This document shows positions 1 to 15,284 of a stretch of 64,000 nt of DNA, one piece after another. Numbering within the stretch: position 1 is the first letter of the stretch; each line of letters begins with the position of its first letter. The position numbers and the translations under genes are program-made. The notes beneath the pieces are model-generated. The model was not told the DNA's origin, did not search any database, and worked only from the letters and a program-made list of their open reading frames with translations. The DNA is taken from IMG/VR virus record IMGVR_UViG_3300020172_001601, positions 62,001 to 126,000 of that record. The stretch is one strand, 5' to 3'.

Positions 1-330
1 ACCCAGCTTTCAAAACCTGGGATGCGTGGGAAAAAGCCAGTGAAGAAAACCCACTTTTTGTTCTCAATCTGAAGTGGCCGGAGTTGGGATACACATTGGC
101 CGGATACCTGGGCGATGCTGCCAAGGAACAACCGCCAGCGCCGCCAGCAGGCTTCCAGGACTTGTCCTCGAAGTTCATCCGGGCAGCATCAAACATTCTG
201 TCTTTCAAGGAAATTCCCAAACCCCAGCCTGTGGTCCAAATGACTGATGGCGATGTTCAAAATAAGGTCAAGCAGGCTCTTGATGCCTGCCTTAGAAGGT
301 TACGGGAAGAACGGGAAGACGAAGATATTT
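1..330 (+). CDS. 3' part of a putative prokaryotic E2-like protein (begins before window)
   Basis: Open frame from position 3 reads PAFKTWDAWEKASEENPLFVLNLKW, resembling the C-terminal W..K...NP motif of the E2-like ORFs at 1527, 2639 and 45999. Confidence 0.5.
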
Positions 331-374
331 AATCTGCTTTACAGCCAGACCTATATGGGGTATAATCGGTCATT

Positions 375-1073
375 GTGATCGCACGATATACTCCTGGCAA
401 AGCAAAAGCCATGTTGCTCGAATTAGTGACAATTGAAACACCAGCCGCCTTCAAGGTGGTTAGCAGGGAGGCTATTGATCCGACGAAGTATATTTTCTTG
501 GTCGAAGCGATTGCGCACAAGTTTCGGAAAAGGTTCCGGGGTAAATTCGAGAAGATCGAGGATACCGAGCCATATTCCATTGCTTCAATGGAGTTGGTCA
601 AGGCCGCTGCCGGATACGATCCTGAAGTGAATGAAGACTTTAGCCGGTACGCATTTCGTGCGATGCGAAATGGAATTATCGAAGCCATTCGTCATCGTAA
701 TCGTCAAAAGCGAACTGCTGAATTTGCCAAGTTGACCACTCTTGAGTGGCAAGAATTGCCAGAGAAAGAACAAGTTCTGTCTGCCGATATTCCCTCGGAT
801 GTATATCAGACCTTGATGGCGAATCACCCGGACGATACCGAACAAGATCGTGCTGATAAGGCACTCTTGACGGAAATCTATATCCAGGGCAAAAAGATTC
901 CATTCATTGCGGAGAAGTATGGAATCAGCAGAATGACGGTATACAACCGTCTTCGTCGCATCATTGGAAAAATCCGTCAGCGTCACAGCGACCTGATTGA
1001 GTCACACGGGGGAATACTCGATGAATGTCCTGAAAGAGAGCCTTGTCGTCTTCACCGAAGGGGCGAGGGTTAA
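375..1073 (+). CDS. RNA polymerase sigma-70 family factor
   Basis: Region 2 (LVKAAAGYDPE..FSRYAFRAMRNGIIEAIR) and region 4 HTH (IAEKYGISRMTVYNRLRR). Confidence 0.85.
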   Translation: MIARYTPGKAKAMLLELVTIETPAAFKVVSREAIDPTKYIFLVEAIAHKFRKRFRGKFEKIEDTEPYSIASMELVKAAAGYDPEVNEDFSRYAFRAMRNGIIEAIRHRNRQKRTAEFAKLTTLEWQELPEKEQVLSADIPSDVYQTLMANHPDDTEQDRADKALLTEIYIQGKKIPFIAEKYGISRMTVYNRLRRIIGKIRQRHSDLIESHGGILDECPEREPCRLHRRGEG

Positions 1074-1527
1074 TTTCAAGGTATACGGCCATTTGGTTCC
1101 AGTGTTTGCAGGCTTGCTGGATGGTGAGCCTCAGATATTCGGAGTTGTGTGGGAAGATGCCGCTCAGAAAGAGGCGTTTGCCCGTCAGGTTCGTGATTGG
1201 ATCGCCGCAGATCGTCTCAAGGAATATATCATGGTGGTCGAAGCATGGACCGCCAATATTCCAGAGGGCGACCAGTATAAAGTCCGGGATTGGCTCAAAT
1301 CTCACGGAACCCTGCAAAATTGGCCCGACCGCAGCGAAGTGGTCATGGTCCTATATTGTTCGCCAACCGAAGAAATTGAGTATACAGCAGACATTATTCG
1401 TGGTAGAATCCCGGCACCAATGATCGGGGAATGGAAAATCAGCCAGCGTAAAGTGAAGTTCAACCACGAAGACTTCACTACTCGATTTCAAGGTTTGTTC
1501 CTTAAAAGCAAAGCGGGGCAAAACTAA
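1021..1527 (+). CDS. hypothetical protein
   Basis: ORF with RBS, coupled to next gene. Confidence 0.6.
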   Translation: MNVLKESLVVFTEGARVNFKVYGHLVPVFAGLLDGEPQIFGVVWEDAAQKEAFARQVRDWIAADRLKEYIMVVEAWTANIPEGDQYKVRDWLKSHGTLQNWPDRSEVVMVLYCSPTEEIEYTADIIRGRIPAPMIGEWKISQRKVKFNHEDFTTRFQGLFLKSKAGQN

Positions 1528-2639
1528 TGCCATCACAACAAGAAATCGTCGATGCAGTCGCTCGCCAGTTGAAGGGCAAAGACCTCAGCCAGCAAGCAGT
1601 CATGGTTCTTCAGAAGGCTACGGCACGGGTGCTTGAGCGAATCAAGCAGAACGTCGATGCCCAAATCAAAGAAGACTCTTCGCCCATCGTTGAGAAGTTC
1701 GTCAAGAATGCCGCCACGAAAATGTCGGCAATGACCCAGCAATGGGCCGATGGCGTCAAGAATGATCTTGTCGTATTCCCGGAAGGAACTCGATATATTT
1801 GGCGTGATGGTCAAATGACAACCATCATCGTTGAGCAGCAGCCGCAGGTTCGCCATATCAACGTCTATGGCAAGATTTACTTGCTGTCGCTGCCATACGT
1901 CCAGTTCATCATGACGTTCAAGAACCACCAGTTGACACAATCTCTTCGGGTGACTTGCACCAAGAAACCAATCACTGATCTCGATCAGGCGGCGAACTTT
2001 CTCCCATTGGGAAATATCGACGCAAGCCACCAAGTTTGCATGGGTAGTTTCCGGTGGCCGACGACCGGCACTATGACCGATATTGTGAACGCTGTTATTG
2101 GTGAATTCTGGCAAGGCCAGTTCAACTACGATAACGGTGGGAATATGTTGGAATTTTTCACCGAAAACTTCGGCGTTAAGACGCATTCACGAGAAGAAGT
2201 GCATCCTGGTTTTGTGGCTTGGGCGAAGAAGACCCAAGAGAACGCTTTGTATGCTACCGAGCGTACAACCAAGTTGAAGCCCGGTGCTACCTTCCGTCGA
2301 TTCTTGGCGACTGATAGCGGCGACAAGAATGGGTCGCAGTCCATTGTCAATAACCTCAAGCAAGAAATCATCACGGCGGTTGGAGCCATCGGTGGCGATA
2401 TTCAATCCCTGTTGACCGCAGTGGACTTGGCTACTGAAAACCGTGAGAAGGCTCATGTTGAAACTCTCCAAGGCGTTCTGAAGGAAATCATTGTTCAGGC
2501 ATATGCTGAACTGTGGGAATACTTGCAGAAGCAACTTCAGGATGAGCGTGCCAAGCTGCAAAAGGAAATGCAGGAAGCCGCCAACAAGCTGAAGAATGAT
2601 TTCGTGTATTACATGGACCAAAAGAAAAAGGTGTGGTAA
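1527..2639 (+). CDS. prokaryotic E2 (Prok-E2_D/PRTRC-B-like) conjugating-enzyme fold with coiled-coil extensions
   Basis: LPYVQF...LPLGNIDASHQVCMG...EFWQGQFN motif with putative catalytic Cys; operon with JAB, E1, Ubl. Confidence 0.7.
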   Translation: MPSQQEIVDAVARQLKGKDLSQQAVMVLQKATARVLERIKQNVDAQIKEDSSPIVEKFVKNAATKMSAMTQQWADGVKNDLVVFPEGTRYIWRDGQMTTIIVEQQPQVRHINVYGKIYLLSLPYVQFIMTFKNHQLTQSLRVTCTKKPITDLDQAANFLPLGNIDASHQVCMGSFRWPTTGTMTDIVNAVIGEFWQGQFNYDNGGNMLEFFTENFGVKTHSREEVHPGFVAWAKKTQENALYATERTTKLKPGATFRRFLATDSGDKNGSQSIVNNLKQEIITAVGAIGGDIQSLLTAVDLATENREKAHVETLQGVLKEIIVQAYAELWEYLQKQLQDERAKLQKEMQEAANKLKNDFVYYMDQKKKVW

Positions 2640-3679
2640 TGGCCAATATCCAGGATACGATCCGTCGTATTCAGGAGGAAGCGAAACGCACGGTCGAGGC
2701 TGCTCGTTTTAGCAAAAGCAAGCCGCCGATTCCCAAGGTCGCTGTTACTCCTGTCGCAAAGGTTCCCACGACTGATGAAGTCGTGGCGAGCCTTCGTGAG
2801 CAGCTTTCTACGGCTATCGCTCAAGCATTGTCCACCAAGGCTGCACGCCGTTATATTGGCGACGTGACGGAAGAATTACAGGATATTGCTGCCGAAGCTA
2901 TTGAGAGCGCTCGGAACACAACCGACTTTGGTGGTGCTGTTAAGACTGGTGATAAAGTCATCATCTATCCCAACAATTGCAAACTTCTTGTGCAGAACGA
3001 GAATGGTCGTGGGTCTTTCATTATTGAGGAAGCCCCTCAATATCGAACAGTATTGACTCATAGTGGGCGAAAGCCACAGACCTATCGTATTCCCATGCCA
3101 TACATGGTTTACCTGATTGGTTTCCAATACCAAGGTGGTGAATATTACCATGCTGGTTCCGGTATTGGTTTTGGGAAAGAGCCGATTGATTCGATTGACA
3201 CTCGGATGCTTATGCCAAAGTTGCCGCACACCCAGGGCAATATGCACATTTGTCAGCCGATGAATAAAACCAATCACAAGACCGTAAAAGAGTTGGGCGA
3301 ATATGTAGTTCAGACGTTTTGGAGTACCATCTTCCATTACTCGTTTGCACACTCACGTTGCCAATTCAAAGTCGATGGCAAGAGCATCAACAGTTTTGCT
3401 GATTGGGCTAAGATCAAAAATCCTCTTGATATTCTCAAGGGCGATTTTGAGCGGGGACAATCCGTTCAAGAAGTTTTGGGCCACTTTGGTCAAGTACAAG
3501 AGACTCGTGGAACCAATACTGCCAATCACAAGATTCAGTCAGCGGTAACTCGTGTTGTAAACGGTGTCAACAGAAGCCTTTCGGCTGAAGAATTGTCGGA
3601 TGTTATTCGCAGGACGGCAGAAGAAATCGTCAATGTTGCACTTCAAAATGCCATTGGCGATTCTGCTTTACAGCATTGA
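2639..3679 (+). CDS. second prokaryotic E2 family D-like protein
   Basis: MPYMVY...PKLPHTQGNMHICQP...TFWSTIFH parallels preceding ORF. Confidence 0.6.
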   Translation: MANIQDTIRRIQEEAKRTVEAARFSKSKPPIPKVAVTPVAKVPTTDEVVASLREQLSTAIAQALSTKAARRYIGDVTEELQDIAAEAIESARNTTDFGGAVKTGDKVIIYPNNCKLLVQNENGRGSFIIEEAPQYRTVLTHSGRKPQTYRIPMPYMVYLIGFQYQGGEYYHAGSGIGFGKEPIDSIDTRMLMPKLPHTQGNMHICQPMNKTNHKTVKELGEYVVQTFWSTIFHYSFAHSRCQFKVDGKSINSFADWAKIKNPLDILKGDFERGQSVQEVLGHFGQVQETRGTNTANHKIQSAVTRVVNGVNRSLSAEELSDVIRRTAEEIVNVALQNAIGDSALQH

Positions 3680-3754
3680 AAATCAGTGGTATAATCTTCC
3701 CACTCGATACGTTGTCGGTTTCAAGTTCAACAAGTTCTTTCACTGGAGTACCAA

Positions 3755-4678
3755 ATGGCAGACCAACCTCCTGTTCCCCTCGCACTGTTTCCGGTGTATT
3801 TGTTCGATCATGAATTCGAGCCGCCGAAGACGGGAACGTATTATCTCGTCACCAAGACGGGCATCTATCTGCACAAAGAAACCAAGGCGGGCAATGCACT
3901 CGTCAAGGTCGAAGGTATTCCTTGGTTGCAAGAGCCGACCATTGAATTCCGTCTCAAGCTGCCGAAGATTCCGGGGAGCATCATCGGTCAGGCCCTTACC
4001 TTCTTTCGGAAGGTGTTTCAACAGTACAAGTCCGAAGCGTATGTGACGCTTTTGTACAGTGCCAAGTTGAATCAATATCGTCTCTGGTGTCCGGCACAGA
4101 AGGTGTCCGCTGCCAGCGTCAACTACGACCGCACCGACCAGCCTTCGTTCGAGGATCGTCAGTCCAACGATTGGCAGATGTGTGGCACGATTCACTCGCA
4201 CTGTGACTTCAGCGCCTATCACTCCGGCACGGATATTGGCGACGAAGCCAGCTTCGACGGTATCCACATTACCCTGGGCCACGTCAATCGGGCGCAGTTC
4301 AGTATGGAAGCCAGTGTCGCCATCAACGACAAGCGTGAGAAGTTGGAACCAGAAAACTGCTGCTCCGGCGTTATCCGGGTTTCCAACAAGGAAGTTGTTT
4401 CTCGCCCATACATGACCTGGGGTGAAAGTTGCTTCTTCGATCTCGAATTGTCGGAAGAAGACGCACAACAGCTTGTTGCTGATACGGCCATCATCAACGC
4501 CGAGTGGATGCCCAAGGTCGAACACAATGGCTGGCAGGGCAACCAGATGGGCTTCTACGGTGGTGGAGGCAACTGGAAGGGCAAGGGGTCAAAAAAAAAC
4601 GGAAACGATGATCTCTTCGACCAAGGCCCCGATGAAGGTACTGCCGACTGGTGGCGAAATCAGAATTTCATCGACTAA
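3755..4678 (+). CDS. JAB/MPN (Prok-JAB) metalloprotease, deubiquitinase-like
   Basis: SEA upstream Glu and GTIHSHCDFSAYHSGTDIGDE (HSH..S..D) JAMM motif. Confidence 0.9.
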   Translation: MADQPPVPLALFPVYLFDHEFEPPKTGTYYLVTKTGIYLHKETKAGNALVKVEGIPWLQEPTIEFRLKLPKIPGSIIGQALTFFRKVFQQYKSEAYVTLLYSAKLNQYRLWCPAQKVSAASVNYDRTDQPSFEDRQSNDWQMCGTIHSHCDFSAYHSGTDIGDEASFDGIHITLGHVNRAQFSMEASVAINDKREKLEPENCCSGVIRVSNKEVVSRPYMTWGESCFFDLELSEEDAQQLVADTAIINAEWMPKVEHNGWQGNQMGFYGGGGNWKGKGSKKNGNDDLFDQGPDEGTADWWRNQNFID

Positions 4679-4767
4679 TTGAACCTGATCGTCTTGAACC
4701 TGATCGCCCTTTGGCTCTCTAGGTGTTTAGCAAAAACTCAATCTCCAATAACGAAGGGAATAGCCTC

Positions 4768-5538
4768 ATGGCAACAAAGAAGGCGGCGAAGGACGAATCA
4801 CCCGTCGCCAAGAAGCCGCTCAAGATTAAGGTGATTGGAACGGGCGGCATCGGCCTTTGCCTGCTTCCTTCGCTCTGTCGATACCTCAACTATAACGGCG
4901 AGAAATATCCCGCCGTGGAAGTGAGCCTGATCGACGGCGATACGTTCGAGGAACGCAATCGTGAGCGACAGGACTTTGTTGAGACGGGGCCGAAGGCGTC
5001 CATGACCGCTGCCGAATATCGGGGCAAATTCCCACGACTGATGTTTTGGGACCATCCGGTATACGTCGCCGATCACAACGTCATTCAGTTGATTCGGGAG
5101 AACGATATTGTTCTTCTCTGTGTGGATAATCACAAGACCCGCAAGCTGATTAGCGACCGGGCCGAAGAACTGAAGAATGTTACCGTCATCAGTGGCGGCA
5201 ACGATTGGACTGATGGAAACGTGTTGCTTCATATTCGACGGGATGAGAAGAACCTGACGCCACCTTTGGCGAGCAAGTTTCACCCGGAGATTTTGAATCC
5301 GACCGACGAGAACCCTGCCGACGTGGAACAGAAGGCAGAAGGTTGTGCAGAGTTGGCTGTTGCTGCACCGCAACTGCTGATTACGAACAACTACATTGCC
5401 GCCAACATGCTGGCGGGACTGTACAACGTGATTGACGAAGGGCGATACGAGAAGGTTCTCGCCGCTCCGCACAATTTCGCAGAGGTCTACTGTGATCTCT
5501 CCGTGATGAAGTCCATCCCACGAGAACGCAAGGTGTAA
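4768..5538 (+). CDS. ThiF/E1-like ubiquitin-activating enzyme
   Basis: VIGTGGIG, IDGDTFEERNRERQ, CVDN, GGND, putative catalytic GCAE, PQLLITN. Confidence 0.9.
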   Translation: MATKKAAKDESPVAKKPLKIKVIGTGGIGLCLLPSLCRYLNYNGEKYPAVEVSLIDGDTFEERNRERQDFVETGPKASMTAAEYRGKFPRLMFWDHPVYVADHNVIQLIRENDIVLLCVDNHKTRKLISDRAEELKNVTVISGGNDWTDGNVLLHIRRDEKNLTPPLASKFHPEILNPTDENPADVEQKAEGCAELAVAAPQLLITNNYIAANMLAGLYNVIDEGRYEKVLAAPHNFAEVYCDLSVMKSIPRERKV

Positions 5539-5603
5539 TCCTTCGTTCGGTTCCACAAAACATACAGAAGTTTCTTTCTCAACCGTGACAGGAGTAATTA
5601 GCA

Positions 5604-5936
5604 ATGGCTCAAGAGCAGAAAAAGCCGGGTGGTGGGTTTTCCAACAAGAAGGCGTCGAGCGAGACGCAGTTACCACAAGGTCAGACCAGCGCCCCAAGCG
5701 CTCAGGATGCCTTGGCAAAGCTGGACGCAGCCGTGAAGGTCATTCACGGTGCCAACGACGGGTCGTTCAATCTGGCTGGATCGAAGGTTTCGACCGTTCG
5801 AGCCTCGCTGGTGGACGCCTTCAATATTCCCGGTGACGCTCAAACCTTCGTCAACGGCGAACAGGTCGATGCCAACTACACGCTCCAGAGCAACGACACT
5901 CTGGAATTCGTGAAGCAGGCTGGAGTCAAGGGTTAA
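5604..5936 (+). CDS. prokaryotic ubiquitin-like (beta-grasp) protein
   Basis: VNGEQVDANYTLQSNDTLEFVKQAGVKG C-terminus ending in Gly; disordered N-terminal ~40 aa. Confidence 0.85.
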   Translation: MAQEQKKPGGGFSNKKASSETQLPQGQTSAPSAQDALAKLDAAVKVIHGANDGSFNLAGSKVSTVRASLVDAFNIPGDAQTFVNGEQVDANYTLQSNDTLEFVKQAGVKG

Positions 5937-6053
5937 GGACTCAGAATGAGCGCATAACTAAGGTGGTTATGCAGTGTTTCGATGGTTAACCACAGGCTCA
6001 CAAGCCTGTGGTTACAACCATAGGTATGAGCCTATGTAGAAAGGGTATCTCAG

Positions 6054-6557
6054 ATGAGATTTATTGTAAGTTGTTTTGCTTTGATGGCTGTCATTCCAAG
6101 TGTATGTTTTGCTCAAACGTCATGTGTGAATGGCATTTGCAATACATCAAGGGTTGTTTCTAAACATGATCTTGGTGGATTTAATTTGGCCCCTGGAGAA
6201 ACTTTGGTTTCTGTCAATGGAGTTCCAGTTTCTCAATTGCAAGGGCCTTTGGTTTCGGCGGCGCAAATTGTCAAAGGTTTTGTCGGTGCAGTTGATGCAA
6301 TTAGTAGCCGCATAGTCAATCGTGACTCTGCTGCTTACAACCACGCATTACGAGAAGCGCAAATTCTGGCAAACAACAGGTGGAAAGGCCACCCGTTAGG
6401 AGTAGCCCCTGGTTGCTCTTACTCAGGAACGGGGACAAGTTCTCATCCTGAAGCCCCGAATCACTGTTACGCCGGAAGTTCAGAAAGTCGATTGGTGGCT
6501 AGAGCATGTGTGCTTGGATCAGATGGAAAGTATTATTGGTCTGCTCACTATCGTTAA
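6054..6557 (+). CDS. secreted hypothetical protein
   Basis: N-terminal signal peptide, Cys-containing C-terminal domain. Confidence 0.6.
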   Translation: MRFIVSCFALMAVIPSVCFAQTSCVNGICNTSRVVSKHDLGGFNLAPGETLVSVNGVPVSQLQGPLVSAAQIVKGFVGAVDAISSRIVNRDSAAYNHALREAQILANNRWKGHPLGVAPGCSYSGTGTSSHPEAPNHCYAGSSESRLVARACVLGSDGKYYWSAHYR

Positions 6558-6594
6558 TTGGAAGTCACAGTGGAAGCCAATAAAATAAATGCAC

Positions 6595-6629
6595 AAGGCG
6601 GGCGTGCCATCAGTACGCCCGCCTTGTTT
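6595..6629 (+). terminator. intrinsic terminator-like hairpin
   Basis: AAGGCGGGCGTG/TACGCCCGCCTT stem followed by GTTT. Confidence 0.6.
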
Positions 6630-6694
6630 CGTTACAATTTCTTGTAGTTCATTGAAAGAGCATTGTATACAAATCTACTATTCCGTGGTAAGAT

Positions 6695-7387
6695 ATGTCC
6701 ATGAAAACCACAGCACGCTTGATTTGCATAGGTGACATACATGGTTGTGCCAATACTCTTCGAGTAATATTGAAGGATATTGACCCACAACCAGAAGACT
6801 CTTTCGTATTTCTCGGCGACTATATCAACCGTGGTCCTGACAGCAAGGGCGTGATCGACCAGATCATTGCTCTCGGCGAAAAGTGCCACGTCGATACGAT
6901 ATTGGGAAATCACGAAGAAATGCTCTTGGGTGCATACCAAGGTGGCAAATCCGATCATGCGTTTTGGTGCAAGTTCGGCGGGGACCAAACGCTGGCATCC
7001 TACGGAGTGAATAACGTCAAAGATATTCCCGGCCAGCATTTGTTGTTCATTGCTCATTGCAAAGAATATCTGGAAACAGATGACTTTATTTTCGTTCACG
7101 CTGGTTGCGATCCTGATCTTCCGCTGGACAAGAATGACGGTGCCGCTTTGCGATGGAATAAATTGGATACCAAGCAGACCAAGAAGCACATGACAGGCAA
7201 GACTGTTGTGTGTGGTCACACAGTTCAGCGACAGATATTTGACTTGGGCTATATCTGTTGTATTGATACAGGGTGTGGCGTTTGGCCCGGTGGCCGATTA
7301 ACTGCGATTGACCTTCGCTCCGGCAAGATTTGGCAAGCCGGTGGAAGAAGCAAGAAGGCCACAATCAAGCAGAGGGAAAACACATGA
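6695..7387 (+). CDS. Ser/Thr protein phosphatase (PPP metallophosphoesterase)
   Basis: GDIHG, GDYINRG, GNHEE, FVHAG, CGHT, IDTG motifs. Confidence 0.92.
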   Translation: MSMKTTARLICIGDIHGCANTLRVILKDIDPQPEDSFVFLGDYINRGPDSKGVIDQIIALGEKCHVDTILGNHEEMLLGAYQGGKSDHAFWCKFGGDQTLASYGVNNVKDIPGQHLLFIAHCKEYLETDDFIFVHAGCDPDLPLDKNDGAALRWNKLDTKQTKKHMTGKTVVCGHTVQRQIFDLGYICCIDTGCGVWPGGRLTAIDLRSGKIWQAGGRSKKATIKQRENT

Positions 7388-7821
7388 GCGGATTCAAGCC
7401 AGCAGGAGCCTTCGCATATAAAACCAAGGATGGTCAAGAAACCGTTGCAGCTACGGCGAGTATGGGTTTGGTGCATTGGTATATGAGATCGTTGCCTAAG
7501 TTGGGCGATGTTCCTGATCCTTTGCCGGTCCTCGAAGTGACACCGATGGCGAGGGAGTTTCCTGGGCCATATGAACCGAACTTTTTTACGGTCGTAATCG
7601 GCTGCATCGAGAGAACTTATGGAACAGCGCCGGAAATCGCTTCTGAGTTTTTGAGTCGAGAATGGTACAATAATCTACCAGAACGCCTTAACGACCATAA
7701 GATTGTTGTTCAGGCTCGTCGTGATGCCGACCCTAAAGTGGTCGCTTACGAGGAAGTTTGCCTGGGCATCCTCAAGTGGTTGGCAAAGTATGGAGACATT
7801 ATTGACCTGGAGGAACCTTGA
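7384..7821 (+). CDS. hypothetical protein
   Basis: ATGA overlap with phosphatase stop. Confidence 0.55.
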   Translation: MSGFKPAGAFAYKTKDGQETVAATASMGLVHWYMRSLPKLGDVPDPLPVLEVTPMAREFPGPYEPNFFTVVIGCIERTYGTAPEIASEFLSREWYNNLPERLNDHKIVVQARRDADPKVVAYEEVCLGILKWLAKYGDIIDLEEP

Positions 7822-8067
7822 GCGATTTGGTGATGTGGATATGTATCGGCACGATGCTGATCGTACTCACTGAGATTTTTGGTCCGCTTTATGTAAAGTA
7901 TTTCTGGCATGATCCAGAACGCCGCCTCAAAGAAATTGAGCGGCAAAATGCTTTGCTTGACAGAATCGAAAACTTCTGATATTCTCTGAGCAGTGAAATA
8001 AACCGGGGCAGCGATGCCCTGGTTCTTTTGAAAAACAAAAAGAAAGTCGCCAGAAACCCAAATCGAC

Positions 8068-8194
8068 TTTACAAGCCTTGAAGACCGTGGTAGAATGATT
8101 GCACAACGCTGATGAAACCGACGACGGAATCAAAAAAGAAAAGTTGTCGGAAACCTGAAGTGGACTTTACAAGGATGGAAAGCTGTGGTAGAAT
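8068..8194 (+). promoter_or_regulatory. tandem sigma70-type promoters upstream of ncRNA/tRNA array
   Basis: TTTACA-N17-TAGAAT at 8068-8096 and 8166-8194 within an imperfect ~98-bp duplication. Confidence 0.75.
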
Positions 8195-8324
8195 GATGAC
8201 ACAACGGAAATGATCCAGCAACCTTGCAGCGATGGTTGATGGGTAACAAGGGTGTGTGAGGGAGGCGCTGTGACCTCCGCACTTAATGTAAACCTGTAAA
8301 ATGGTTTCGCCCTTAAAACGATAT

Positions 8325-8415
8325 GGCGAGGTAGCTCAGTCTGTTAGAGCATTGTGAATAGGGGCCGAAAGGTCTACTAACGCAAGGGTCGGTGGTTAAA
8401 ATCCATCCCTCGCCA
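8325..8415 (+). ncRNA. tRNA-like RNA with extended GAAA-capped hairpin in place of anticodon loop
   Basis: Acceptor GGCGAGG/CCTCGCC, D arm, T arm (GGTTAAAATCC); no 7-nt anticodon loop. Confidence 0.7.
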
Positions 8416-8418
8416 CTT

Positions 8419-8487
8419 TGTAAGTCAAATGCCGTCAGGACTACATTTGCAAAACGTAACGTCTTGGCAACCATTTGTTGACTTACA
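8419..8487 (+). ncRNA. Y-RNA-like small RNA
   Basis: Terminal stem TGTAAGTC/GACTTACA, 5' GTCAAATGC, GGACTACATT, 3' ATTTGTTGAC. Confidence 0.6.
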
Positions 8488-8492
8488 TTTAT

Positions 8493-8617
8493 GGACTGTT
8501 AGCTCAGTGGCCTGTTTACAGGGAAGCCGGTTGTATTAGCCGAGAAATCGGATGATACAAACACTTCAGAGCGTCGTAGCAATACGAAGGTCGATGGTTC
8601 GATTCCATCACGGTCCA
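8493..8617 (+). ncRNA. tRNA-like RNA, GCAA tetraloop instead of anticodon, D-loop insertion
   Basis: GGACTGT/ACGGTCC acceptor; TCGTA-GCAA-TACGA; GATGG-TTCGATT-CCATC. Confidence 0.75.
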
Positions 8618-8621
8618 CTAT

Positions 8622-8799
8622 GGGGAAGTAGTAGAATCCAACTCAGAGCAGTTGGAGTGGAAAAGCAGTTTAGGCTCACGGAGCAATCCGCATGTTGATG
8701 GGGAAACCCATAAACATGAACCAAGAGGGGCGACCCTCGAACAACTGCCGAGAATACCGGGGTAACTCGGTGATGCTGGTTCGAGTCCAGCCTTCCCCA
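8622..8799 (+). ncRNA. tRNA-like RNA, GTAA tetraloop, ~110-nt multi-hairpin D-loop insertion
   Basis: GGGGAAG/CTTCCCC; CCGGG-GTAA-CTCGG; GCTGG-TTCGAGT-CCAGC. Confidence 0.75.
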
Positions 8800-8803
8800 C
8801 TAC

Positions 8804-8914
8804 GCAGCGGTAGCTCAAATAGAACCGTTTTACAGGTAGTGGCAACATTACTTGCATTTGGTAGAGCCTTCCGTAAGGAAGAGGTTGAAGGTGAGAGTCC
8901 TTCCCGCTGCACCA
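8804..8914 (+). ncRNA. tRNA-like RNA, GTAA tetraloop, D-loop insertion, encoded CCA
   Basis: GCAGCGG/CCGCTGC-ACCA; CTTCC-GTAA-GGAAG; T arm GAAGG-TGAGAGT-CCTTC. Confidence 0.75.
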
Positions 8915-8915
8915 T

Positions 8916-9047
8916 GCTGGGGTAGTAGAATTGGAATGTATGACTAGGAAGCGACATGAGGTTGTAATGACCTTTAATTCGCCCCCATGACCATACAGAG
9001 AACGCTACAGTAATGTGGAAATGCAGGTTCGAGTCCTGCCCCCGGCA
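8916..9047 (+). ncRNA. tRNA-like RNA, GTAA tetraloop, D-loop insertion
   Basis: GCTGGGG/CCCCGGC; CTACA-GTAA-TGTGG; GCAGG-TTCGAGT-CCTGC. Confidence 0.75.
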
Positions 9048-9077
9048 CTTAACATTCAACACACAGGAGATTGCACG

Positions 9078-9548
9078 ATGGCATCAATTTCGCTTGCGAA
9101 GGCCCTGAAGCTGAAGAACCGTCTGGCTGGTCGTCTGAACAAAGTTCAGAATGATATTGTGACGTACAACTCAGTCCTGACCGAACAAGCGGGCAAAGTT
9201 GATGTTCCCGCTCTGTGCAAACTGCGTGATGAGATCGCCGACAACCTCATCGCATTGAAGACGAAGATCATCGTCTCCAATGCTGAGATTCAGGGCGACC
9301 TGATTCGTCAGGGAGAATTGAAGTCCAAGTTGACGTGGCTTGCCACGCTCGACACCCGTGACGGCAAGGAACGTCATGGCTACCAAAACACCGAAGTAAC
9401 CTGGACGGCCACGCTCAAGAAGAAAGACGTGGACGACGAAACCAGGAAGCTGGAAACCGAGATCGACGCCATCCAGGATAAGCTGGACAGCTTCAACCAC
9501 ACGAAGAAAGTGGAAGTTGCTGATCGTTCGCTCGAACTCGCCAGCTAA
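9078..9548 (+). CDS. DIP1984-like coiled-coil protein
   Basis: ISLAKALKLKNRL...LETEIDAIQDKLDSFNHT pattern; strong RBS (CAGGAG). Confidence 0.6.
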   Translation: MASISLAKALKLKNRLAGRLNKVQNDIVTYNSVLTEQAGKVDVPALCKLRDEIADNLIALKTKIIVSNAEIQGDLIRQGELKSKLTWLATLDTRDGKERHGYQNTEVTWTATLKKKDVDDETRKLETEIDAIQDKLDSFNHTKKVEVADRSLELAS

Positions 9549-9555
9549 CGAGCCA

Positions 9556-9756
9556 CCACGATCCGGGAGAGTAAGAGGGTCTGTGAGGAAACTATCGGGG
9601 GCTTCGGCCACCGATGGTCGTTTCTCCGAAAGGAGAGACATTACATATTGTTCACGGTCAAGGTGACGCCTTATAGTTGAAACCTGATCGACTCAAAATG
9701 TAAGCCTCAAGCTACAAAACTTTTCCCCTCCTGGCTTTCCCTTTTCCGGGTCGTGG
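9556..9756 (+). ncRNA. structured ~200-nt RNA candidate
   Basis: Closing stem CCACGATCCGG/CCGGGTCGTGG with internal UUCG and GAAA hairpins. Confidence 0.55.
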
Positions 9757-9811
9757 CCTTTTCATGAACGGTAACTTCAGACGCTTAGTACGCAACCTTC
9801 GGAGGCAATCC

Positions 9812-10033
9812 ATGAAGACTTACATCTTCACTCTCACAGATGAAGCGCAGGCAGAACCAGCACGGTTCTTGCCGTTCATCGAGAGCGAACTTGCTGCCCA
9901 GGGTTGTAGGAATTTCCAATACCTCACAGAAGTTGGTTGCATCACAGCCGACTTCCCAGGTGAACGGACTTTCGGCCCGATCAACGGTATCGGATCAGCG
10001 GAAGAAAGCGTCGATTGCACGACGCAAGCGTAA
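9812..10033 (+). CDS. small hypothetical protein
   Basis: GGAGG RBS, 73 aa. Confidence 0.6.
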   Translation: MKTYIFTLTDEAQAEPARFLPFIESELAAQGCRNFQYLTEVGCITADFPGERTFGPINGIGSAEESVDCTTQA

Positions 10034-10035
10034 CA

Positions 10036-10202
10036 TGCCTTGGAAGGGGACCAGCATCCTCCCCAAAGTTGACTATATGTTGGTGATAGGTAGCATCTTC
10101 GGATGCCAACCCGCTTTAAGAACAAGCCAAACGTCTAGTGCCGAGTAGCTTGTTCTCCAACATGACTTCTACCTAAAAGGTGGAAGCGGCCCCTTCCAGG
10201 CA
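10036..10202 (+). ncRNA. long-hairpin RNA with central bubble (6S-like architecture?)
   Basis: TGCCTTGGAAGGGG/CCCCTTCCAGGCA closing stem, ATGTTGG/CCAACAT inner stem, hairpin in 3' bubble. Confidence 0.45.
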
Positions 10203-10208
10203 CCTTAT

Positions 10209-10338
10209 AACCCGATGGGCGTGGCGCAGCCCTAGTCAAAACGATATGCTCTACTGATTAGTAGTAGCTGGCGTATACTACGGGACACAATCAGTGGTGT
10301 ATCTACCTTAAACGGTGGGCAGCAGCCCCCATCGGGTT
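10209..10338 (+). ncRNA. structured RNA candidate
   Basis: Perfect 11-bp closing stem AACCCGATGGG/CCCATCGGGTT. Confidence 0.45.
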
Positions 10339-10343
10339 CCTTC

Positions 10344-10649
10344 ATGACACTTGCTGAATTGAAAGACAACTGGCAAAAGTACGGCGTGGATATTCAAGGT
10401 CAGATCAGGCCCTTGAAAGATTGCTTTGTGATTTGTTGGGGACCGATGCCCGATATTCCCGATGCCCTGTTGTTCGATACAGGCGGCGAACAAGGCGCAC
10501 CGGCATATGCGTTGAAGGTGGGAGAGAATGGGGAAGACCTGATTTCGGTCAACCCGGCCAATCCAGCCGAGACGACCGTGCTGGGGAAGTTGGTTCTTTT
10601 GGAAAATTCTGGAAATCGCAGTGAACCTTTTCCAGATTCGACTCTCTAG
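10344..10649 (+). CDS. hypothetical protein
   Basis: ORF 101 aa. Confidence 0.5.
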   Translation: MTLAELKDNWQKYGVDIQGQIRPLKDCFVICWGPMPDIPDALLFDTGGEQGAPAYALKVGENGEDLISVNPANPAETTVLGKLVLLENSGNRSEPFPDSTL

Positions 10650-10799
10650 TAATGTGCGGACGTGGAGGGCCGATATGTGTGGCTTTCTCTCGGCAGTCAC
10701 ATATGGTTAGCGAAGCCGGGAGTTTTTGAAAAAATAGATGACGAAAAAATTTCTTGGAAAAGTGAACCTTTTTTTGAAGTAAGTCGTCTATAATACTGT

Positions 10800-10870
10800 A
10801 GCGGGTTGGAGGAGTGGTTCCTTGCAAGGCTCATAACCTTGAGACACTGGTTCGAGTCCAGTACCCGCCA
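10800..10870 (+). tRNA. tRNA-Met(CAT), initiator-like 1:72 mismatch
   Basis: CAAGG-CTCATAA-CCTTG. Confidence 0.85.
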
Positions 10871-10893
10871 CTAGGTCGAAAGACCTTATATAT

Positions 10894-10967
10894 CGTAGGG
10901 TGGAGCAGTCTGGTAGCTCGCAAGGCTCATAACCTTGAGGCCGCAGGTTCAAATCCTGCCCCTGCCA
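10894..10967 (+). tRNA. tRNA-Met(CAT), initiator-like
   Basis: CAAGG-CTCATAA-CCTTG, C1 mismatch. Confidence 0.9.
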
Positions 10968-11045
10968 CTTTACAAGTCGAAAGACTTGTGGTAGAATCTT
11001 GAAGTTCGATAAACAAACACACGGCTCGTTGCCGTGTCAGGAGAC

Positions 11046-11183
11046 ATGACAATGTTCGTTCAAATTACCAATATCGGTCGCTGGCATAATGGGCAACAAG
11101 CCCAGCCACAGACAACGTGCGCCAAGCCCGCAGTGCGCACCGTCGTCGCCAATAAAGGTAATGAAGATACATTGCCTTCCTGA
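11046..11183 (+). CDS. putative 45-aa leader peptide
   Basis: CAGGAG RBS; MTMFVQITNIGRWH...EDTLPS*; lies between promoter (10969) and terminator. Confidence 0.55.
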   Translation: MTMFVQITNIGRWHNGQQAQPQTTCAKPAVRTVVANKGNEDTLPS

Positions 11184-11245
11184 CCGAACCATACAAGTTC
11201 GGCTCAGGATGCCTGAGCCGGACTGAAACAATATAAAGTTTCAGC

Positions 11246-11287
11246 AAACCCCGCCCAGGCAAGAAAAGCCTGGGCGGGGTTTTTTTG
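11246..11287 (+). terminator. strong intrinsic terminator/attenuator before tRNA array
   Basis: ACCCCGCCCAGGC/GCCTGGGCGGGGT followed by a T run. Confidence 0.85.
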
Positions 11288-11300
11288 TTGGATTTTTTAT

Positions 11301-11375
11301 TGCCGGGGGTTCTGTGCTGGTACGGAAACTTGACTCTGAATCAAGACGACGTAGGTTCGATTCCTACCCCGGCAG
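11301..11375 (+). tRNA. tRNA-Gln(CTG)
   Basis: CTTGA-CTCTGAA-TCAAG. Confidence 0.8.
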
Positions 11376-11439
11376 CTTCAAACTTGGGAGAATGATGATG
11401 ACAATGCACCGATATAAACGTGGAGCCATAACTGCATAT

Positions 11440-11512
11440 GGCTCCGACACCTTTAGTGGATGAGGCCCCGCCTTTTAAGCGGGTCAAGAGGGATCGTTAC
11501 CCTACGGAGCCA
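11440..11512 (+). tRNA. tRNA-Lys(TTT), atypical T loop
   Basis: CCCGC-CTTTTAA-GCGGG; T loop ATCGTTA. Confidence 0.7.
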
Positions 11513-11517
11513 CTTCT

Positions 11518-11602
11518 GCGCTCGACGCTGAATTGGTTGCAGCACCAGACTTTTAATCTGGTTTCCGCAAGGGACGTGTGGGTTCGAGTCCCACCGGGCG
11601 CA
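11518..11602 (+). tRNA. tRNA-Lys(TTT) with long variable arm
   Basis: CCAGA-CTTTTAA-TCTGG; V arm TTCC-GCAA-GGGA. Confidence 0.8.
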
Positions 11603-11627
11603 CTGTAACGAAATGAATGAACACTGA

Positions 11628-12053
11628 ATGAAACTGCAAGAATTGACGGGATTGAGTGACGCTGATCCGATTCATCGTTACTTAGGAATAGTGGATAGAT
11701 TCCTTGGGGAACATGACTGGTTTGAAACTTGTCATAAACTCCAGAAGGACGAAGTGATTGAGGCGATGTGGTTGTGCCTCGGTCATCCAGTTCAATATCC
11801 AATTGTTGAAGATTATTGTCTCGATAACTTCGAGGAATATCTTAAACAAAAAAGTGAACCTGAGATCGCCGATATTGTCTATAAGTTGAGGCGAAGGAAA
11901 GGGGAAGAAGGGATCGACAACCACGGGATTCGGGTAGTTATGATGTGGCTTATTGCCAATATCGACTATCTGAAAGAAAGATACTTGGAGGAAGGATACG
12001 GAAAACGCCATCGGAAAATAACAGCCGGTTGGTATCCAAGTATAGATGATTGA
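11628..12053 (+). CDS. hypothetical protein
   Basis: ORF 141 aa between tRNAs. Confidence 0.6.
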   Translation: MKLQELTGLSDADPIHRYLGIVDRFLGEHDWFETCHKLQKDEVIEAMWLCLGHPVQYPIVEDYCLDNFEEYLKQKSEPEIADIVYKLRRRKGEEGIDNHGIRVVMMWLIANIDYLKERYLEEGYGKRHRKITAGWYPSIDD

Positions 12054-12057
12054 ATAT

Positions 12058-12147
12058 TGTGAGATACGCTAGTTGGTAAGCGGCGAAGCTGTTAACTTCG
12101 TGCAATCCGTCTTGAACGGTACGCAGGTTCGACCCCTGCTCTCACAG
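12058..12147 (+). tRNA. tRNA-Asn(GTT) with long variable arm
   Basis: CGAAG-CTGTTAA-CTTCG; ~22-nt variable region. Confidence 0.75.
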
Positions 12148-12153
12148 CTTTCT

Positions 12154-13661: not shown

Positions 13662-13738
13662 GAGGTTGTGTTCGTCTAGTGGTCTAGGATGCCGTCGTTG
13701 AAGACGGCGACATGGGTTCAAATCCCATACACAATCTC
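13662..13738 (+). ncRNA. Glu-like tRNA body with 6-nt anticodon loop
   Basis: CCGTC-GTTGAA-GACGG; extended acceptor GAGGTTGTGT/ACACAATCTC. Confidence 0.65.
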
Positions 13739-13835: not shown

Positions 13836-13906
13836 GATTCGGGTTAGTGTAACGGTAGCACGGAGCCGTCAAAGGCTCCAGAGTGGTTCGACTCCACACC
13901 CTTATC
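13836..13906 (+). ncRNA. tRNA-like RNA, short anticodon loop (TAGTGTAACGGTAGCACG family)
   Basis: GGAGCC-GTCAAA-GGCTCC; T arm present. Confidence 0.6.
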
Positions 13907-13913
13907 ACAATAT

Positions 13914-15276: not shown

Positions 15277-15284
15277 CTATTTAC

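What the first reader, a model, noticed from the sequence alone, without database searches (positions are those of the whole stretch)
1527..5936. Complete phage-encoded ubiquitin-like conjugation operon (E2-E2-JAB-E1-Ubl)
Seen: two tandem E2-family-D-like ORFs with putative catalytic Cys (HQVCMG, MHICQP), a JAMM protease, a ThiF/E1 and a beta-grasp protein ending AGVKG. Known: such gene sets occur in bacterial PRTRC-type mobile operons, and related E1/E2/JAB/Ubl systems (Bil, CBASS Cap2/Cap3) act in anti-phage defence. Inference: here a probable jumbo phage carries it with promoters of the same type used across the window, next to its sigma factor and a Ser/Thr phosphatase. This suggests phage-directed ubiquitin-like tagging of host or phage proteins, or counter-defence against host Ubl systems.
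Basis: partly seen in the sequence, partly recalled or inferred. Interest (0 to 1): 0.85.

Follow-up and report, generated by a model that had tools for sequence, protein, structure and literature searches.

The report
Ubiquitin-like tagging cassette in huge phages
A 340-kb phage-like genome carries its own set of genes for activating a small ubiquitin-like protein, attaching it to targets and removing it; relatives of this set were known only by prediction on bacterial plasmids, and its conservation across many huge phages suggests that viruses of bacteria tag proteins this way too.

Summary
Window 1527-5936 holds five co-oriented genes:
- two paralogous E2-like proteins, each with an invariant Cys
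- a JAMM/JAB peptidase with an intact motif
- a minimal ThiF-type E1 with all adenylation residues and an invariant Cys
- a 110-aa protein ending in an invariant GVKG

The window is part of a 340-kb IMG/VR viral contig with about 50 tRNA genes. The cassette keeps its gene order on related contigs of 70-673 kb and gave no match in 185,579 reference bacterial and archaeal genomes. All genes are under purifying selection.

It is a distant relative of the uncharacterised PRTRC cassette ("6d" class). It lacks the ParB, E and F partners and scores far below the family cut-offs.

New points:
- The two-E2 arrangement is conserved, and this genome has a third paralog just upstream.
- A sigma factor and a 168-aa protein of unknown fold are co-transcribed and translationally coupled with the E2 genes.
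- Two positionally conserved sigma-70-type promoters split the locus into two units.
- Some orthologous Ubls carry tails after the terminal Gly, which implies processing.

Caveats: the UBC fold was not confirmed by structure search, and conjugation and its targets are inferred. A similar, unrecognised cassette sits in cultured Bacillus jumbo phages.

The parts
1..332 (+). C-terminal end of a third E2-like paralog (A0, 366 aa; full gene = L001:2465-3562, starting about 770 nt before the window)
   Evidence: BLASTP against A gives 1e-17 and against B 6e-15. It keeps LPN...VC, that is the Asn and the catalytic Cys. It is present in L009, L010 and L011 but absent in L004 and L006.
338..366 (+). 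Promoter P1 (TTTACA-N17-TATAAT) in front of the sigma gene
   Evidence: It matches 11 of 12 consensus positions. The motif is over-represented, 9 found against 0 expected. The position is conserved in L009, L011, L013 and L022.
375..1073 (+). Sigma-70/ECF-type sigma factor, first gene of unit 1
   Evidence: TIGR02937 E=3e-15, Sigma70_r2 E=3.9e-6. It is syntenic in L004, L006, L018 and L021, and in L022 as the 181-aa sigma-like gene just before the E2 genes, identified there by eye only.
1021..1527 (+). U: conserved 168-aa protein of unknown function (the ORF could start at 997). Its stop overlaps the start of A (TAATG).
   Evidence: Alignments A4 and A7. The family has 302 representative clusters. 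The AlphaFold2 model has pLDDT 93.4 and no significant PDB match. The TAATG overlap is seen. Remote relatives occur in phages without the cassette, and some show a weak PF26900 lambda Ea47 hit.
1527..2639 (+). E2-like A (Prok-E2_D family); invariant Asn163 and Cys171 (PN-x7-C)
   Evidence: The model core 85-265 has pLDDT 84-96 with the order beta-meander, Cys loop, three helices. Foldseek gives significant matches only to uncharacterised phage proteins in BFVD.
2639..3679 (+). E2-like B, a fast-evolving paralog of A. Cys205 and a second Cys114 are invariant. His197 sits at the position aligned with A's Asn163. The start overlaps the stop of A (TAATG).
   Evidence: dN/dS is 0.18-0.26, the highest in the locus.
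3667..3695 (+). Promoter P2 (TTTACA-N17-TATAAT) in front of the JAB gene
   Evidence: The position is conserved 67-88 nt before JAB in L009, L011, L013, L006, L004 and L022.
3755..4678 (+). JAB/JAMM metallopeptidase with an N-terminal alpha+beta domain and a Gly-rich tail
   Evidence: Prok-JAB E=2.9e-5, PRTRC_A E=1.5e-7. H147-S-H149, S157 and D160 are invariant and E94 is nearly invariant. The family has 245 homolog clusters.
4768..5538 (+). Minimal E1-like adenylating enzyme (ThiF/MoeB type, 256 aa; the ORF opens at 4723)
   Evidence: ThiF E=1.9e-12, PRTRC_ThiF E=1.5e-14. PDB profile hits to Uba4, MoeB, SUMO E1, NEDD8 E1 and Cap2. GxGGxG, D56, N64, R67, Q68, K76, D120, R125 and C193 are invariant.
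5604..5936 (+). Ubiquitin-like protein: a variable, low-complexity N-terminal tail of about 40 aa, then a region of about 70 aa inferred to be a beta-grasp, with an invariant C-terminal GVKG
   Evidence: Orthologs carry tails after the Gly: IK in L011 and LPFWQSLS in L023. The C-terminal motif is shared with PRTRC protein C. There are weak ThiS and TGS hits and ThiS, MoaD and RnfH leads in the Atlas. dN/dS is 0.03-0.04 against the two closest loci.
5981..6021 (+). Strong RNA hairpin after the Ubl gene, with no U-tract
   Evidence: Fold of 5937-6030: -37.3 kcal/mol, z = -5.4.
6593..6636 (+). Intrinsic-terminator-like hairpin followed by UUUCGUU; the likely end of unit 2
   Evidence: -31 kcal/mol, z = -6.2.

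Best explanation
This is a self-contained ubiquitin-like protein-conjugation module of a huge phage. It is a far-diverged relative of the PRTRC ('6d') cassette of bacterial mobile elements.

Shown by sequence:
- A minimal ThiF-type E1 has every ATP/Mg-binding residue and an invariant Cys193.
- Two conserved paralogous E2-like proteins, three in this genome, each keep an invariant Cys. In the A type, an Asn sits eight residues before that Cys.
- The JAMM peptidase has an intact metal site.
- The small protein has an invariant C-terminus, GVKG. In some orthologs this is followed by a short tail.
- The genes sit in two units. P1 drives sigma, U, E2-A and E2-B; U, A and B are coupled by TAATG overlaps. 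P2 drives JAB, E1 and Ubl.
- Both promoters are of the host sigma-70 type, the same type that precedes the phage's tRNA and aminoacyl-tRNA synthetase genes.

Inferred mechanism:
1. JAB trims the precursor to expose Gly110.
2. E1 adenylates Gly110 and takes the Ubl on Cys193.
3. The Ubl passes to the Cys of the E2-like proteins.
4. The E2-like proteins attach it to lysines of target proteins. A and B may work as a pair, or as alternative specificity factors, since B evolves fastest.
5. JAB also reverses the modification.

The promoter type suggests expression by host RNA polymerase early in infection. That would point to targets among host proteins or early phage proteins, that is host takeover or counter-defence, rather than virion assembly.
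For: - Gene identities and catalytic residues.
- A and B are paralogs.
- A and the Ubl share motifs with PRTRC B and PRTRC C. The Cys-containing motif xxICIGS in PRTRC B matches xxVCMG in A. The C-terminal FVRAAGAKG-A in PRTRC C matches FVKQAGVKG in the Ubl.
- Tails after the terminal Gly in L011 and L023 imply processing to a free Gly.
- The order E2-E2-JAB-E1-Ubl is kept on contigs of 70-673 kb, down to about 28% identity for the E2 genes.
- Every gene is under purifying selection, dN/dS 0.03-0.26.
- The promoters are positionally conserved and the gene starts and stops overlap.
- Viral context: IMG/VR contig, 44-49 tRNA genes, phage-family matches in the window, and no relative found in the GTDB species genomes.
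Against: - The UBC fold was not confirmed. Foldseek of the A model against the PDB gave no significant hit (best E=0.24). Two true E2 enzymes appear only at ranks 12 and 25 with TM 0.31. A profile search of PDB sequences found nothing.
- Prok-E2_D has never been characterised biochemically, as far as the searched literature shows.
- The E1 is of the small ThiF/MoeB type, which also serves sulfur transfer.
- The Ubl ends in a single Gly and its beta-grasp fold was not modelled here.
- No E3-like or target-recognition protein is identified.
- No target, conjugate or expression data exist.
- Viral identity rests on IMG/VR classification and gene content. No capsid or terminase gene lies in the 64 kb examined.
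Confidence: 0.6

Rival explanations
1. Sulfur-carrier system. E1 adenylates the small protein and it becomes a C-terminal thiocarboxylate, as with ThiS, MoaD or TtuB. It would then donate sulfur, for example to thiolate the phage's many tRNAs, and the Cys-bearing 'E2-like' proteins would act as sulfur relays.
For: The E1 is closest in the PDB to Uba4 and MoeB. The Ubl has weak ThiS and TGS similarity and ThiS/MoaD leads. The cassette lies next to about 50 tRNA genes and three aminoacyl-tRNA synthetase genes. From general knowledge, the Thermus TtuB/TtuC system also has a JAMM partner.
Against: The E1 has no rhodanese domain. No PP-loop thiolase or cysteine desulfurase was found among the 30 window ORFs scanned with Pfam. 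The best family matches are to the PRTRC proteins, not to ThiF or MoeB equivalogs. The Asn-x7-Cys motif and the Prok-E2_D hits point to E2-type chemistry. The tRNA region is not adjacent to the cassette in all relatives.
Confidence: 0.1
2. The cassette is mainly a counter-defence device against host ubiquitin-like immunity (Bil, Bub or type II CBASS). The JAB would strip host-attached Ubl or cGAS conjugates from phage or host proteins, and the phage Ubl, E1 and E2 proteins would act as decoys or competitors.
For: Bacterial Ubl systems attack phage tail proteins and prime CBASS (PMC11601603, PMC10097602). JAB is the most widely conserved component, with 245 clusters against 54 for A. The promoters are of the early, host sigma-70 type.
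Against: E1, Ubl and both E2-like proteins keep all catalytic residues under strong purifying selection. That argues for active conjugation rather than decoys. There is no sequence similarity to any model in the PADLOC defence library. The hosts and their defence repertoire are unknown.
Confidence: 0.15
3. A and B are not E2 enzymes. They would be another kind of Cys-dependent protein with a fold of their own, such as a peptidase, a transferase or a structural adaptor, and the 'Prok-E2_D' label would be misleading. The module would then do something other than a classical E1-to-E2 relay.
For: No significant PDB structural match despite a confident core model. No PDB sequence match. The only significant structural neighbours are uncharacterised phage proteins. 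B has a His at the position aligned with A's Asn, and a second invariant Cys.
Against: 21 of 28 orthologs hit Prok-E2_D. The order of secondary-structure elements fits the UBC layout: a beta-meander, then a loop with Asn-x7-Cys, then three helices. True E2 enzymes (CDC34A, Ube2S) are among the top 25 weak hits. The genes are strictly linked to E1, JAB and Ubl in every relative, as in PRTRC.
Confidence: 0.15
4. The contig is not a phage. It would be a cellular chromosome fragment, megaplasmid or other extrachromosomal element carrying an ordinary PRTRC-type mobile cassette.
For: No virion hallmark gene lies in the 64-kb window. One related contig is filed in NCBI under a Neisseriaceae MAG. PRTRC cassettes are typical of plasmids and ICEs.
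Against: The contig is listed in IMG/VR. Its features are those described for huge phages: 44-49 tRNA genes, aminoacyl-tRNA synthetases, Ro60, almost one-strand coding, and PHROG matches that include a coat-associated family and an SSB. No relative of A was found in 185,579 species genomes. The ParB, E and F genes of PRTRC are missing.
Confidence: 0.05

Closest known systems
PRTRC system (ParB-related, ThiF-related cassette; NCBIfam TIGR03734-03741; operon class '6d' of Iyer, Burroughs and Aravind 2006, PMC1779556)
   Same: The core order is the same: E2-like (protein B), then JAB with an N-terminal extra domain (protein A), then ThiF. The best named matches for the E1, the JAB and A are the PRTRC models. 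A and PRTRC B share a catalytic motif: Asn, then a His, then Cys-x-Gly, followed by an aromatic-rich helix. The Ubl and PRTRC C share the C-terminal motif F-V-[KR]-x-A-G-x-K-G. Both systems are carried by mobile genomes, and both are biochemically uncharacterised.
   Different: Scores are 6-10 times below the family cut-offs. There is no ParB, protein E or protein F. The Ubl gene lies after the E1 rather than before the E2. The E2 is duplicated (two or three paralogs of 346-370 aa with long helical extensions, against one of about 240 aa). The Ubl has a 40-aa N-terminal tail. The cassette is linked to a sigma factor and the U protein, and the carrier is a huge phage rather than a plasmid or ICE.
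Unrecognised cassette of cultured Bacillus jumbo phages (vB_BauM_KLEB27-3 gp194-gp199; also vB_BceM_WH1 and Edson)
   Same: It is phage-encoded. It has a ThiF E1 (26-29% identity across the three phages), a JAB annotated 'PRTRC_A domain', a 255-aa protein with a weak Prok-E2_D hit that keeps the Asn and Cys, and a ubiquitin-like gene nearby.
   Different: Its Ubl is a four-repeat Prok_Ub polyprotein placed upstream. It has a single E2-like gene plus a 559-aa unknown protein. It has no sigma factor or U gene. The host is Gram-positive. tblastn with A finds nothing in GenBank phages.
Bil (type I/II BilABCD) and Bub bacterial ubiquitination-like defence operons
   Same: The parts list is the same: Ubl, E2, JAB peptidase and E1. 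Those systems have demonstrated conjugation chemistry (PMC10557695, PMC11601596, PMC11601603).
   Different: Those are host-encoded anti-phage systems. Their E1 is a larger multidomain enzyme with a mobile Cys domain (Bil), or they use oxyester chemistry and a serine protease (Bub). None of the phage proteins matches any model in the PADLOC defence library. I did not check whether that release contains Bil models.
Type II CBASS Cap2/Cap3
   Same: An E1/E2-type adenylation and transfer step plus a JAB deconjugase. Cap2 appears among the PDB hits of the E1 profile.
   Different: In CBASS, Cap2 is an E2-E1 fusion that conjugates the cGAS-like enzyme itself. There is no separate Ubl, and it is a host defence system (PMC10097602).
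ThiS/ThiF, MoaD/MoeB, Urm1/Uba4 and TtuB/TtuC sulfur-carrier pairs
   Same: A small homodimer-type E1 with the same adenylation residues. The best PDB matches are Uba4 and MoeB. The small partner is inferred to be a beta-grasp protein and ends in Gly.
   Different: Here there are E2-like proteins and a dedicated JAB. There is no rhodanese domain, thiolase or cofactor-biosynthesis gene nearby. No CxxC pair was seen in the E1 by eye.

Membership tests
E1-like superfamily (ThiF/MoeB/Uba) | Rossmann-type adenylation domain with GxGxxG, the Asp, Asn-x2-Arg-Gln, Lys and Asp-Asn motifs | tested here: met
   Pfam ThiF E=1.9e-12, above its cut-off. All motif residues are invariant in 11 aligned sequences. 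There are 63 PDB E1 matches.
E1-like superfamily (ThiF/MoeB/Uba) | Catalytic Cys that takes the Ubl as a thioester | tested here: inconclusive
   Cys193 is invariant, also in the PRTRC ThiF proteins. Its equivalence to the crossover-loop Cys of ThiF, MoeB or ATG7 was not mapped.
JAMM/JAB metallopeptidases | The E ... HxH-x7-S-x2-D metal and catalytic motif | tested here: met
   H147, H149, S157 and D160 are invariant and E94 is nearly invariant. Prok-JAB scores 24.3 bits against a cut-off of 25.
Prok-E2_D (PF14460) / UBC-like fold | Profile match to PF14460 | tested here: met
   A itself is sub-threshold (18 bits against 25), but 21 of 28 orthologs match, best 8e-9. B reaches the family only through A.
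Prok-E2_D (PF14460) / UBC-like fold | Conserved catalytic Cys in the loop after the beta-sheet, preceded by an Asn as in HPN...C | tested here: met
   Cys171 is invariant in A, A0, B, Bacillus phage gp196 and PRTRC B. Asn163 is invariant in A types. Most B types have His at the aligned position.
Prok-E2_D (PF14460) / UBC-like fold | Three-dimensional UBC fold | tested here: inconclusive
   The model core is confident and the order of elements is compatible. Foldseek against the PDB gives no significant hit, and true E2 enzymes reach only TM 0.31.
Ubiquitin-like beta-grasp modifiers | C-terminal Gly exposed directly or after processing | tested here: met
   GVKG is invariant at the C-terminus. 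It is followed by 2- and 8-residue tails in L011 and L023.
Ubiquitin-like beta-grasp modifiers | Beta-grasp fold | tested here: inconclusive
   There are only weak ThiS and TGS hits over the last strand, Atlas leads to ThiS, MoaD, RnfH and ubiquitin clusters, and no PDB sequence hit.
PRTRC system | Members score above the NCBIfam equivalog cut-offs for proteins A, B, C and ThiF | tested here: not met
   Scores against cut-offs: ThiF 53.9 vs 144.75, A 31.2 vs 101.8, B 13.7 vs 131.45. Protein C has no hit.
PRTRC system | Companion ParB-family protein and proteins E and F (and D) in the cassette | tested here: not met
   None was found among the ten neighbouring genes scanned. U against PRTRC E by hhalign gives probability 0.05%. 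The canonical order is seen in Cupriavidus.
Bil / CBASS / other catalogued defence Ubl systems | Match to the system's protein models | tested here: not met
   No PADLOC hit for any cassette protein at E<=0.01. I did not check which Ubl systems the 2023 library covers; Bub was described after that release.
Huge (jumbo) phage | Virion and packaging hallmark genes on the same contig | not testable with these tools
   Only the 64-kb window and about 6 kb of flank are readable. Support is indirect: IMG/VR listing, tRNA array, PHROG hits, no GTDB relatives.

The most novel reading that the evidence does not exclude
A whole clade of huge phages runs its own ubiquitin-like conjugation pathway. It would have an obligate pair of E2-type enzymes, expanded to three in this genome. 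It would be switched on from early host-type promoters together with a phage sigma factor, and would covalently tag host or phage proteins during takeover. That would make it the first viral counterpart, among viruses of bacteria, to the host Ubl defence systems, and the first clue to what the PRTRC class does.
Probability: 0.45. Interest if true: 0.85.

Novelty: new variant of a known kind. Interest (0 to 1): 0.7.

Why it matters
Ubiquitin-like conjugation in bacteria has so far been shown only as a host weapon against phages (CBASS Cap2, Bil, Bub). The PRTRC ('6d') class has been predicted since 2006, and I found no functional study of it in the searched library.

Here a compact version with all catalytic residues intact is fixed in a widespread lineage of huge phages and is under strong purifying selection. 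That opens three lines of work:
- It gives a tractable five-protein set, about 1,400 residues in total, for testing the chemistry of the Prok-E2_D family.
- It suggests that phages use protein tagging offensively or for self-regulation.
- It raises the question of why two E2 paralogs are always kept.

A related cassette in cultured Bacillus jumbo phages means genetics is possible now.

Tried and rejected
- DNA-level search of GenBank phages with window 1-12000 found nothing. tblastn with A also found nothing.
- PHROGs and PADLOC gave no hits for the cassette proteins, apart from one weak E1 hit.
- PDB sequence-profile searches with the A, Ubl and U alignments gave nothing meaningful. Chance hits were a NEAT-domain protein for the Ubl tail and ParB for U at E=0.14.
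- Foldseek against the PDB gave no significant match for the A model or the U model. The influenza PB2, portal and Mediator top hits have TM below 0.25 and were rejected as noise.
- hhalign of U against PRTRC protein E showed no relation, so U is not a disguised PRTRC E.
- The idea that U is an obligate system component was weakened. Remote U relatives sit in phage regions without any E1 or E2 gene, and L023 lacks it.
- The idea that the sigma factor is an obligate component was weakened. L023 lacks it.
- The IleRS-like gene was tried as a taxonomic marker. The hits are mostly contaminant-like records and are uninformative.
- Literature searches for a described phage-encoded E1/E2/JAB/Ubl system found none. 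The 2021 jumbo-phage survey by the Aravind group does not mention one.

Full report
**1. What is in the sequence**

- A, 1527-2639 (370 aa)
- B, 2633/2639-3679 (346-348 aa)
- a JAB protein, 3755-4678 (307 aa)
- an E1, 4723/4768-5538 (256 aa from the first ATG)
- a 110-aa protein, 5604-5936, ending AGVKG

Pfam and NCBIfam give the following:
- ThiF E=1.9e-12, above the cut-off
- PRTRC_ThiF 1.5e-14
- Prok-JAB 2.9e-5
- PRTRC_A 1.5e-7
- Prok-E2_D 0.0025 and PRTRC_B 0.029 for A
- nothing for B
- only weak TGS and ThiS hits for the small protein

The long ORFs on the opposite strand lie entirely within the + strand genes and were treated as non-coding shadows; this was not tested.

**2. The two E2-like genes are real and are paralogs**

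A has 54 homolog clusters and B has 25. Of 28 aligned A orthologs, 21 hit Prok-E2_D, the best at 8e-9.

A and B align by BLASTP (8e-6) and by profile-profile comparison (probability 99.9%, E=2.8e-32, 270 columns).

In the A family, Asn163 and Cys171 are invariant in the motif P-N-x4-H-x-V-C-M-G. This resembles the HPN...C active site of UBC enzymes, which I state from established knowledge. The motif is followed by an invariant aromatic helix, F-W-Q-S-x-F.

In the B family, the equivalent Cys205 is invariant. At the position aligned with A's Asn, most members have His197. A second Cys (C114) is invariant.

The Cys is also conserved in PRTRC protein B and in a Bacillus phage protein.

A third paralog, A0 (366 aa), ends at window position about 329. 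Its catalytic part lies just upstream, at L001:2465-3562.

**3. Structure test of the E2 claim**

An AlphaFold2 model of A has a confident core (residues 85-265, pLDDT 84-96). The element order is a beta-meander, then the Cys loop, then three helices. Long low-confidence helices flank the core. This order fits the UBC layout.

However, Foldseek against the PDB gave no significant match. The best E-value was 0.24. CDC34A and Ube2S appear at ranks 12 and 25 with TM 0.31.

Against predicted viral structures there are four significant matches, all to uncharacterised phage proteins.

I therefore rate the fold test inconclusive. The E2 label rests on the Prok-E2_D profile, the motif and the gene context.

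**4. E1, JAB and Ubl**

E1: the nucleotide-binding and catalytic residues are invariant across phage and PRTRC sequences. These are GxGGxG, D56, N64, R67, Q68, K76, D120 and R125, together with Cys193. A profile of the family hits Uba4, MoeB, SUMO E1, NEDD8 E1, ATG7 and Cap2 in the PDB.

JAB: the JAMM motif is intact. H147-S-H149, S157 and D160 are invariant and E94 is nearly invariant. The protein has an N-terminal extra domain, as described for class 6d (PMC1779556).

Ubl: it has a variable, low-complexity N-terminal tail of about 40 residues, a conserved core and an invariant terminal GVKG. Two orthologs carry extra residues after the Gly: IK in L011 and an 8-residue tail in L023. This is the pattern of a precursor that is trimmed to expose the Gly. 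PRTRC protein C of Cupriavidus ends in the same motif followed by one residue. Atlas neighbours include ThiS, MoaD, RnfH and ubiquitin clusters. These are leads only.

**5. Operon anatomy**

The stop of U overlaps the start of A, and the stop of A overlaps the start of B. Both overlaps read TAATG.

Two near-consensus sigma-70-type promoters (TTTACA-N17-TATAAT) lie at 338-366, before the sigma gene, and at 3667-3695, before JAB. The motif occurs nine times in the window, all on the + strand, against none in 100 shuffles. Several other copies lie upstream of tRNA genes and the IleRS-like gene.

The promoter before JAB is positionally conserved in six orthologous loci although its spacer sequence diverges. 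The one before sigma is conserved in four.

The locus therefore reads as two units:
- P1: sigma, U, A, B
- P2: JAB, E1, Ubl

After the Ubl gene there is a strong hairpin. A terminator-like hairpin with a U-tract follows at about 6593-6636, after a strain-specific small secreted-protein gene.

Because the promoters match the host sigma-70 consensus, I infer early expression by host RNA polymerase. This is inference only.

**6. Conservation and carrier**

The window is identical to IMGVR_UViG_3300020172_001601 (340,341 bp), approximately positions 62,001-126,000.

It carries 49 tRNA genes by ARAGORN and 44 by Rfam. It also carries IleRS-, MetRS- and GluRS/GlnRS-like genes, Ro60/TROVE, an SPFH protein and an M16 peptidase. 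Coding is almost entirely on one strand, and there are several PHROG matches.

The block NAD-ligase ... [sigma] [U] E2-E2-JAB-ThiF-Ubl recurs on contigs of 70, 246, 346, 463, 603 and 673 kb. Both E2 genes are always present and both keep the Cys. One remote variant, L014, has a single 552-aa E2-like gene.

No relative of A was found in one genome from each of 185,579 bacterial and archaeal species. That search is pattern-based, so absence is not absolute.

dN/dS against three relatives is 0.03-0.26 for every gene. Against the two closest loci it is lowest for the Ubl. It is highest for B.

**7. The extra gene U and the sigma factor**

U (168 aa) belongs to a family with 302 representative clusters.

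Close members keep the sigma-U-E2 context. Remote members lie in phage regions without the cassette, and some show a weak lambda Ea47 domain hit.

Its model is very confident (pLDDT 93.4) but has no significant PDB neighbour.

Sigma and U are therefore frequent, co-transcribed companions rather than obligate parts. L022 lacks U, and L023 lacks both.

**8. Comparison with known systems**

The nearest named family is PRTRC, class 6d of Iyer et al. 2006. Its canonical order in Cupriavidus is ParB, E, C (Ubl), F, B (E2), A (JAB), ThiF.

The phage cassette shares the B-A-ThiF core and the sequence motifs. It differs in these ways:
- Its scores are far below the equivalog cut-offs.
- It lacks ParB, E and F.
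- The Ubl gene comes last.
- The E2 gene is duplicated.

It should be called PRTRC-like, not a PRTRC member.

It matches no model in the PADLOC defence library. It is therefore not a close relative of the Cap2/Cap3 or other defence models in that library. I did not check whether the release includes Bil models.

Cultured Bacillus jumbo phages (KLEB27-3, WH1, Edson) carry an analogous cassette that has not been annotated as such. It consists of a four-repeat Prok_Ub protein, a Prok-E2_D-like protein, a PRTRC_A-like JAB and a ThiF.

I found no paper describing a phage-encoded E1/E2/JAB/Ubl pathway. The 2021 comparative survey of 224 jumbo phages does not mention one.

**9. Most likely mechanism and its rivals**

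Most likely (confidence 0.6) is an active Ubl conjugation and deconjugation module. The steps would be:
1. JAB matures the Ubl.
2. E1 adenylates Gly110 and probably forms a thioester on Cys193.
3. The Ubl passes to Cys171 or Cys205 of the E2-like pair.
4. The Ubl is attached to target lysines.
5. JAB reverses the modification.

The conserved pair, with the fast-evolving B, suggests a heterodimer or a specificity subunit.

The rivals are:
- a sulfur-carrier role (0.1)
- a mainly counter-defence deconjugase or decoy role (0.15)
- A and B not being E2 enzymes at all (0.15)
- a non-viral carrier (0.05)

These are not all mutually exclusive with the main reading.

**10. Verdict**

It is incomplete on locus boundaries and unproven on chemistry.

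This is a new variant of a known but uncharacterised kind, with good experimental tractability. Interest: 0.7.

Noticed in passing
window 8325-8415, 8916-9047, 20241-20313: Rfam finds three tRNA-like genes that ARAGORN missed. One is 132 nt long and may contain an intron. ARAGORN in turn reports two tRNAs with two-base 'anticodons' at 13664-13738 and 13836-13908, and several over-long tRNAs at 11518-11603, 12058-12148, 15195-15277 and 39141-39233.
   Followed up: no
window 6054-6557: A 167-aa protein with a signal-peptide-like N-terminus is inserted between the Ubl gene and the phosphatase. It is present only in this genome, not in any related locus. It is followed by a strong terminator.
   Followed up: partly
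window 6695-7821; L009 11455-12645: In the window, the metallophosphatase gene and the following 163-aa gene overlap by about 58 nt. In L009 and L010 they appear as one 397-aa ORF. This could be a fusion, or a frameshift difference between close relatives.
   Followed up: no
window 1021-1527 (protein U): Every U ortholog ends in the conserved tail R-F-x-x-L-F-x-K-x-K-A-G-x-N. Lys50, Glu74, Glu106 and Trp138 are invariant. The fold is confidently predicted but has no PDB neighbour. The conserved acidic residues suggest an enzyme or a binding site.
   Followed up: partly
window 42332-44077 and L022 14711-14987: A Ro60/TROVE-vWA protein is encoded in the tRNA-rich region here and also near the cassette in a 246-kb relative. 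This suggests a conserved RNA-quality-control gene in this phage lineage.
   Followed up: no
L001 280-2394; also L004, L006, L021, L022, L023: A gene called as an NAD-dependent DNA ligase (LigA type, about 690-720 aa) lies a few genes upstream of the cassette in the five related loci. In L001 a 704-aa ORF occupies that position but was not scanned. This may be plain synteny or a functional link.
   Followed up: no
L023 (GCA_003962895.1, RXKI01000004.1, 70 kb): A related cassette contig is filed in NCBI under a 'Neisseriaceae bacterium' MAG. It is probably a phage contig binned with its host. That would hint at a betaproteobacterial host for part of the clade.
   Followed up: no
window 4001-6000: G+C is 0.53 over the JAB-E1-Ubl part, against 0.46-0.50 elsewhere in the window.
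   Followed up: no
PDB entries 9egb, 9egc, 9egd: Recently deposited 'THIF-type NAD/FAD binding fold domain-containing protein' structures of about 265 aa rank among the best matches to the E1 profile, at 4e-10. I could not tell what system they come from.
   Followed up: no
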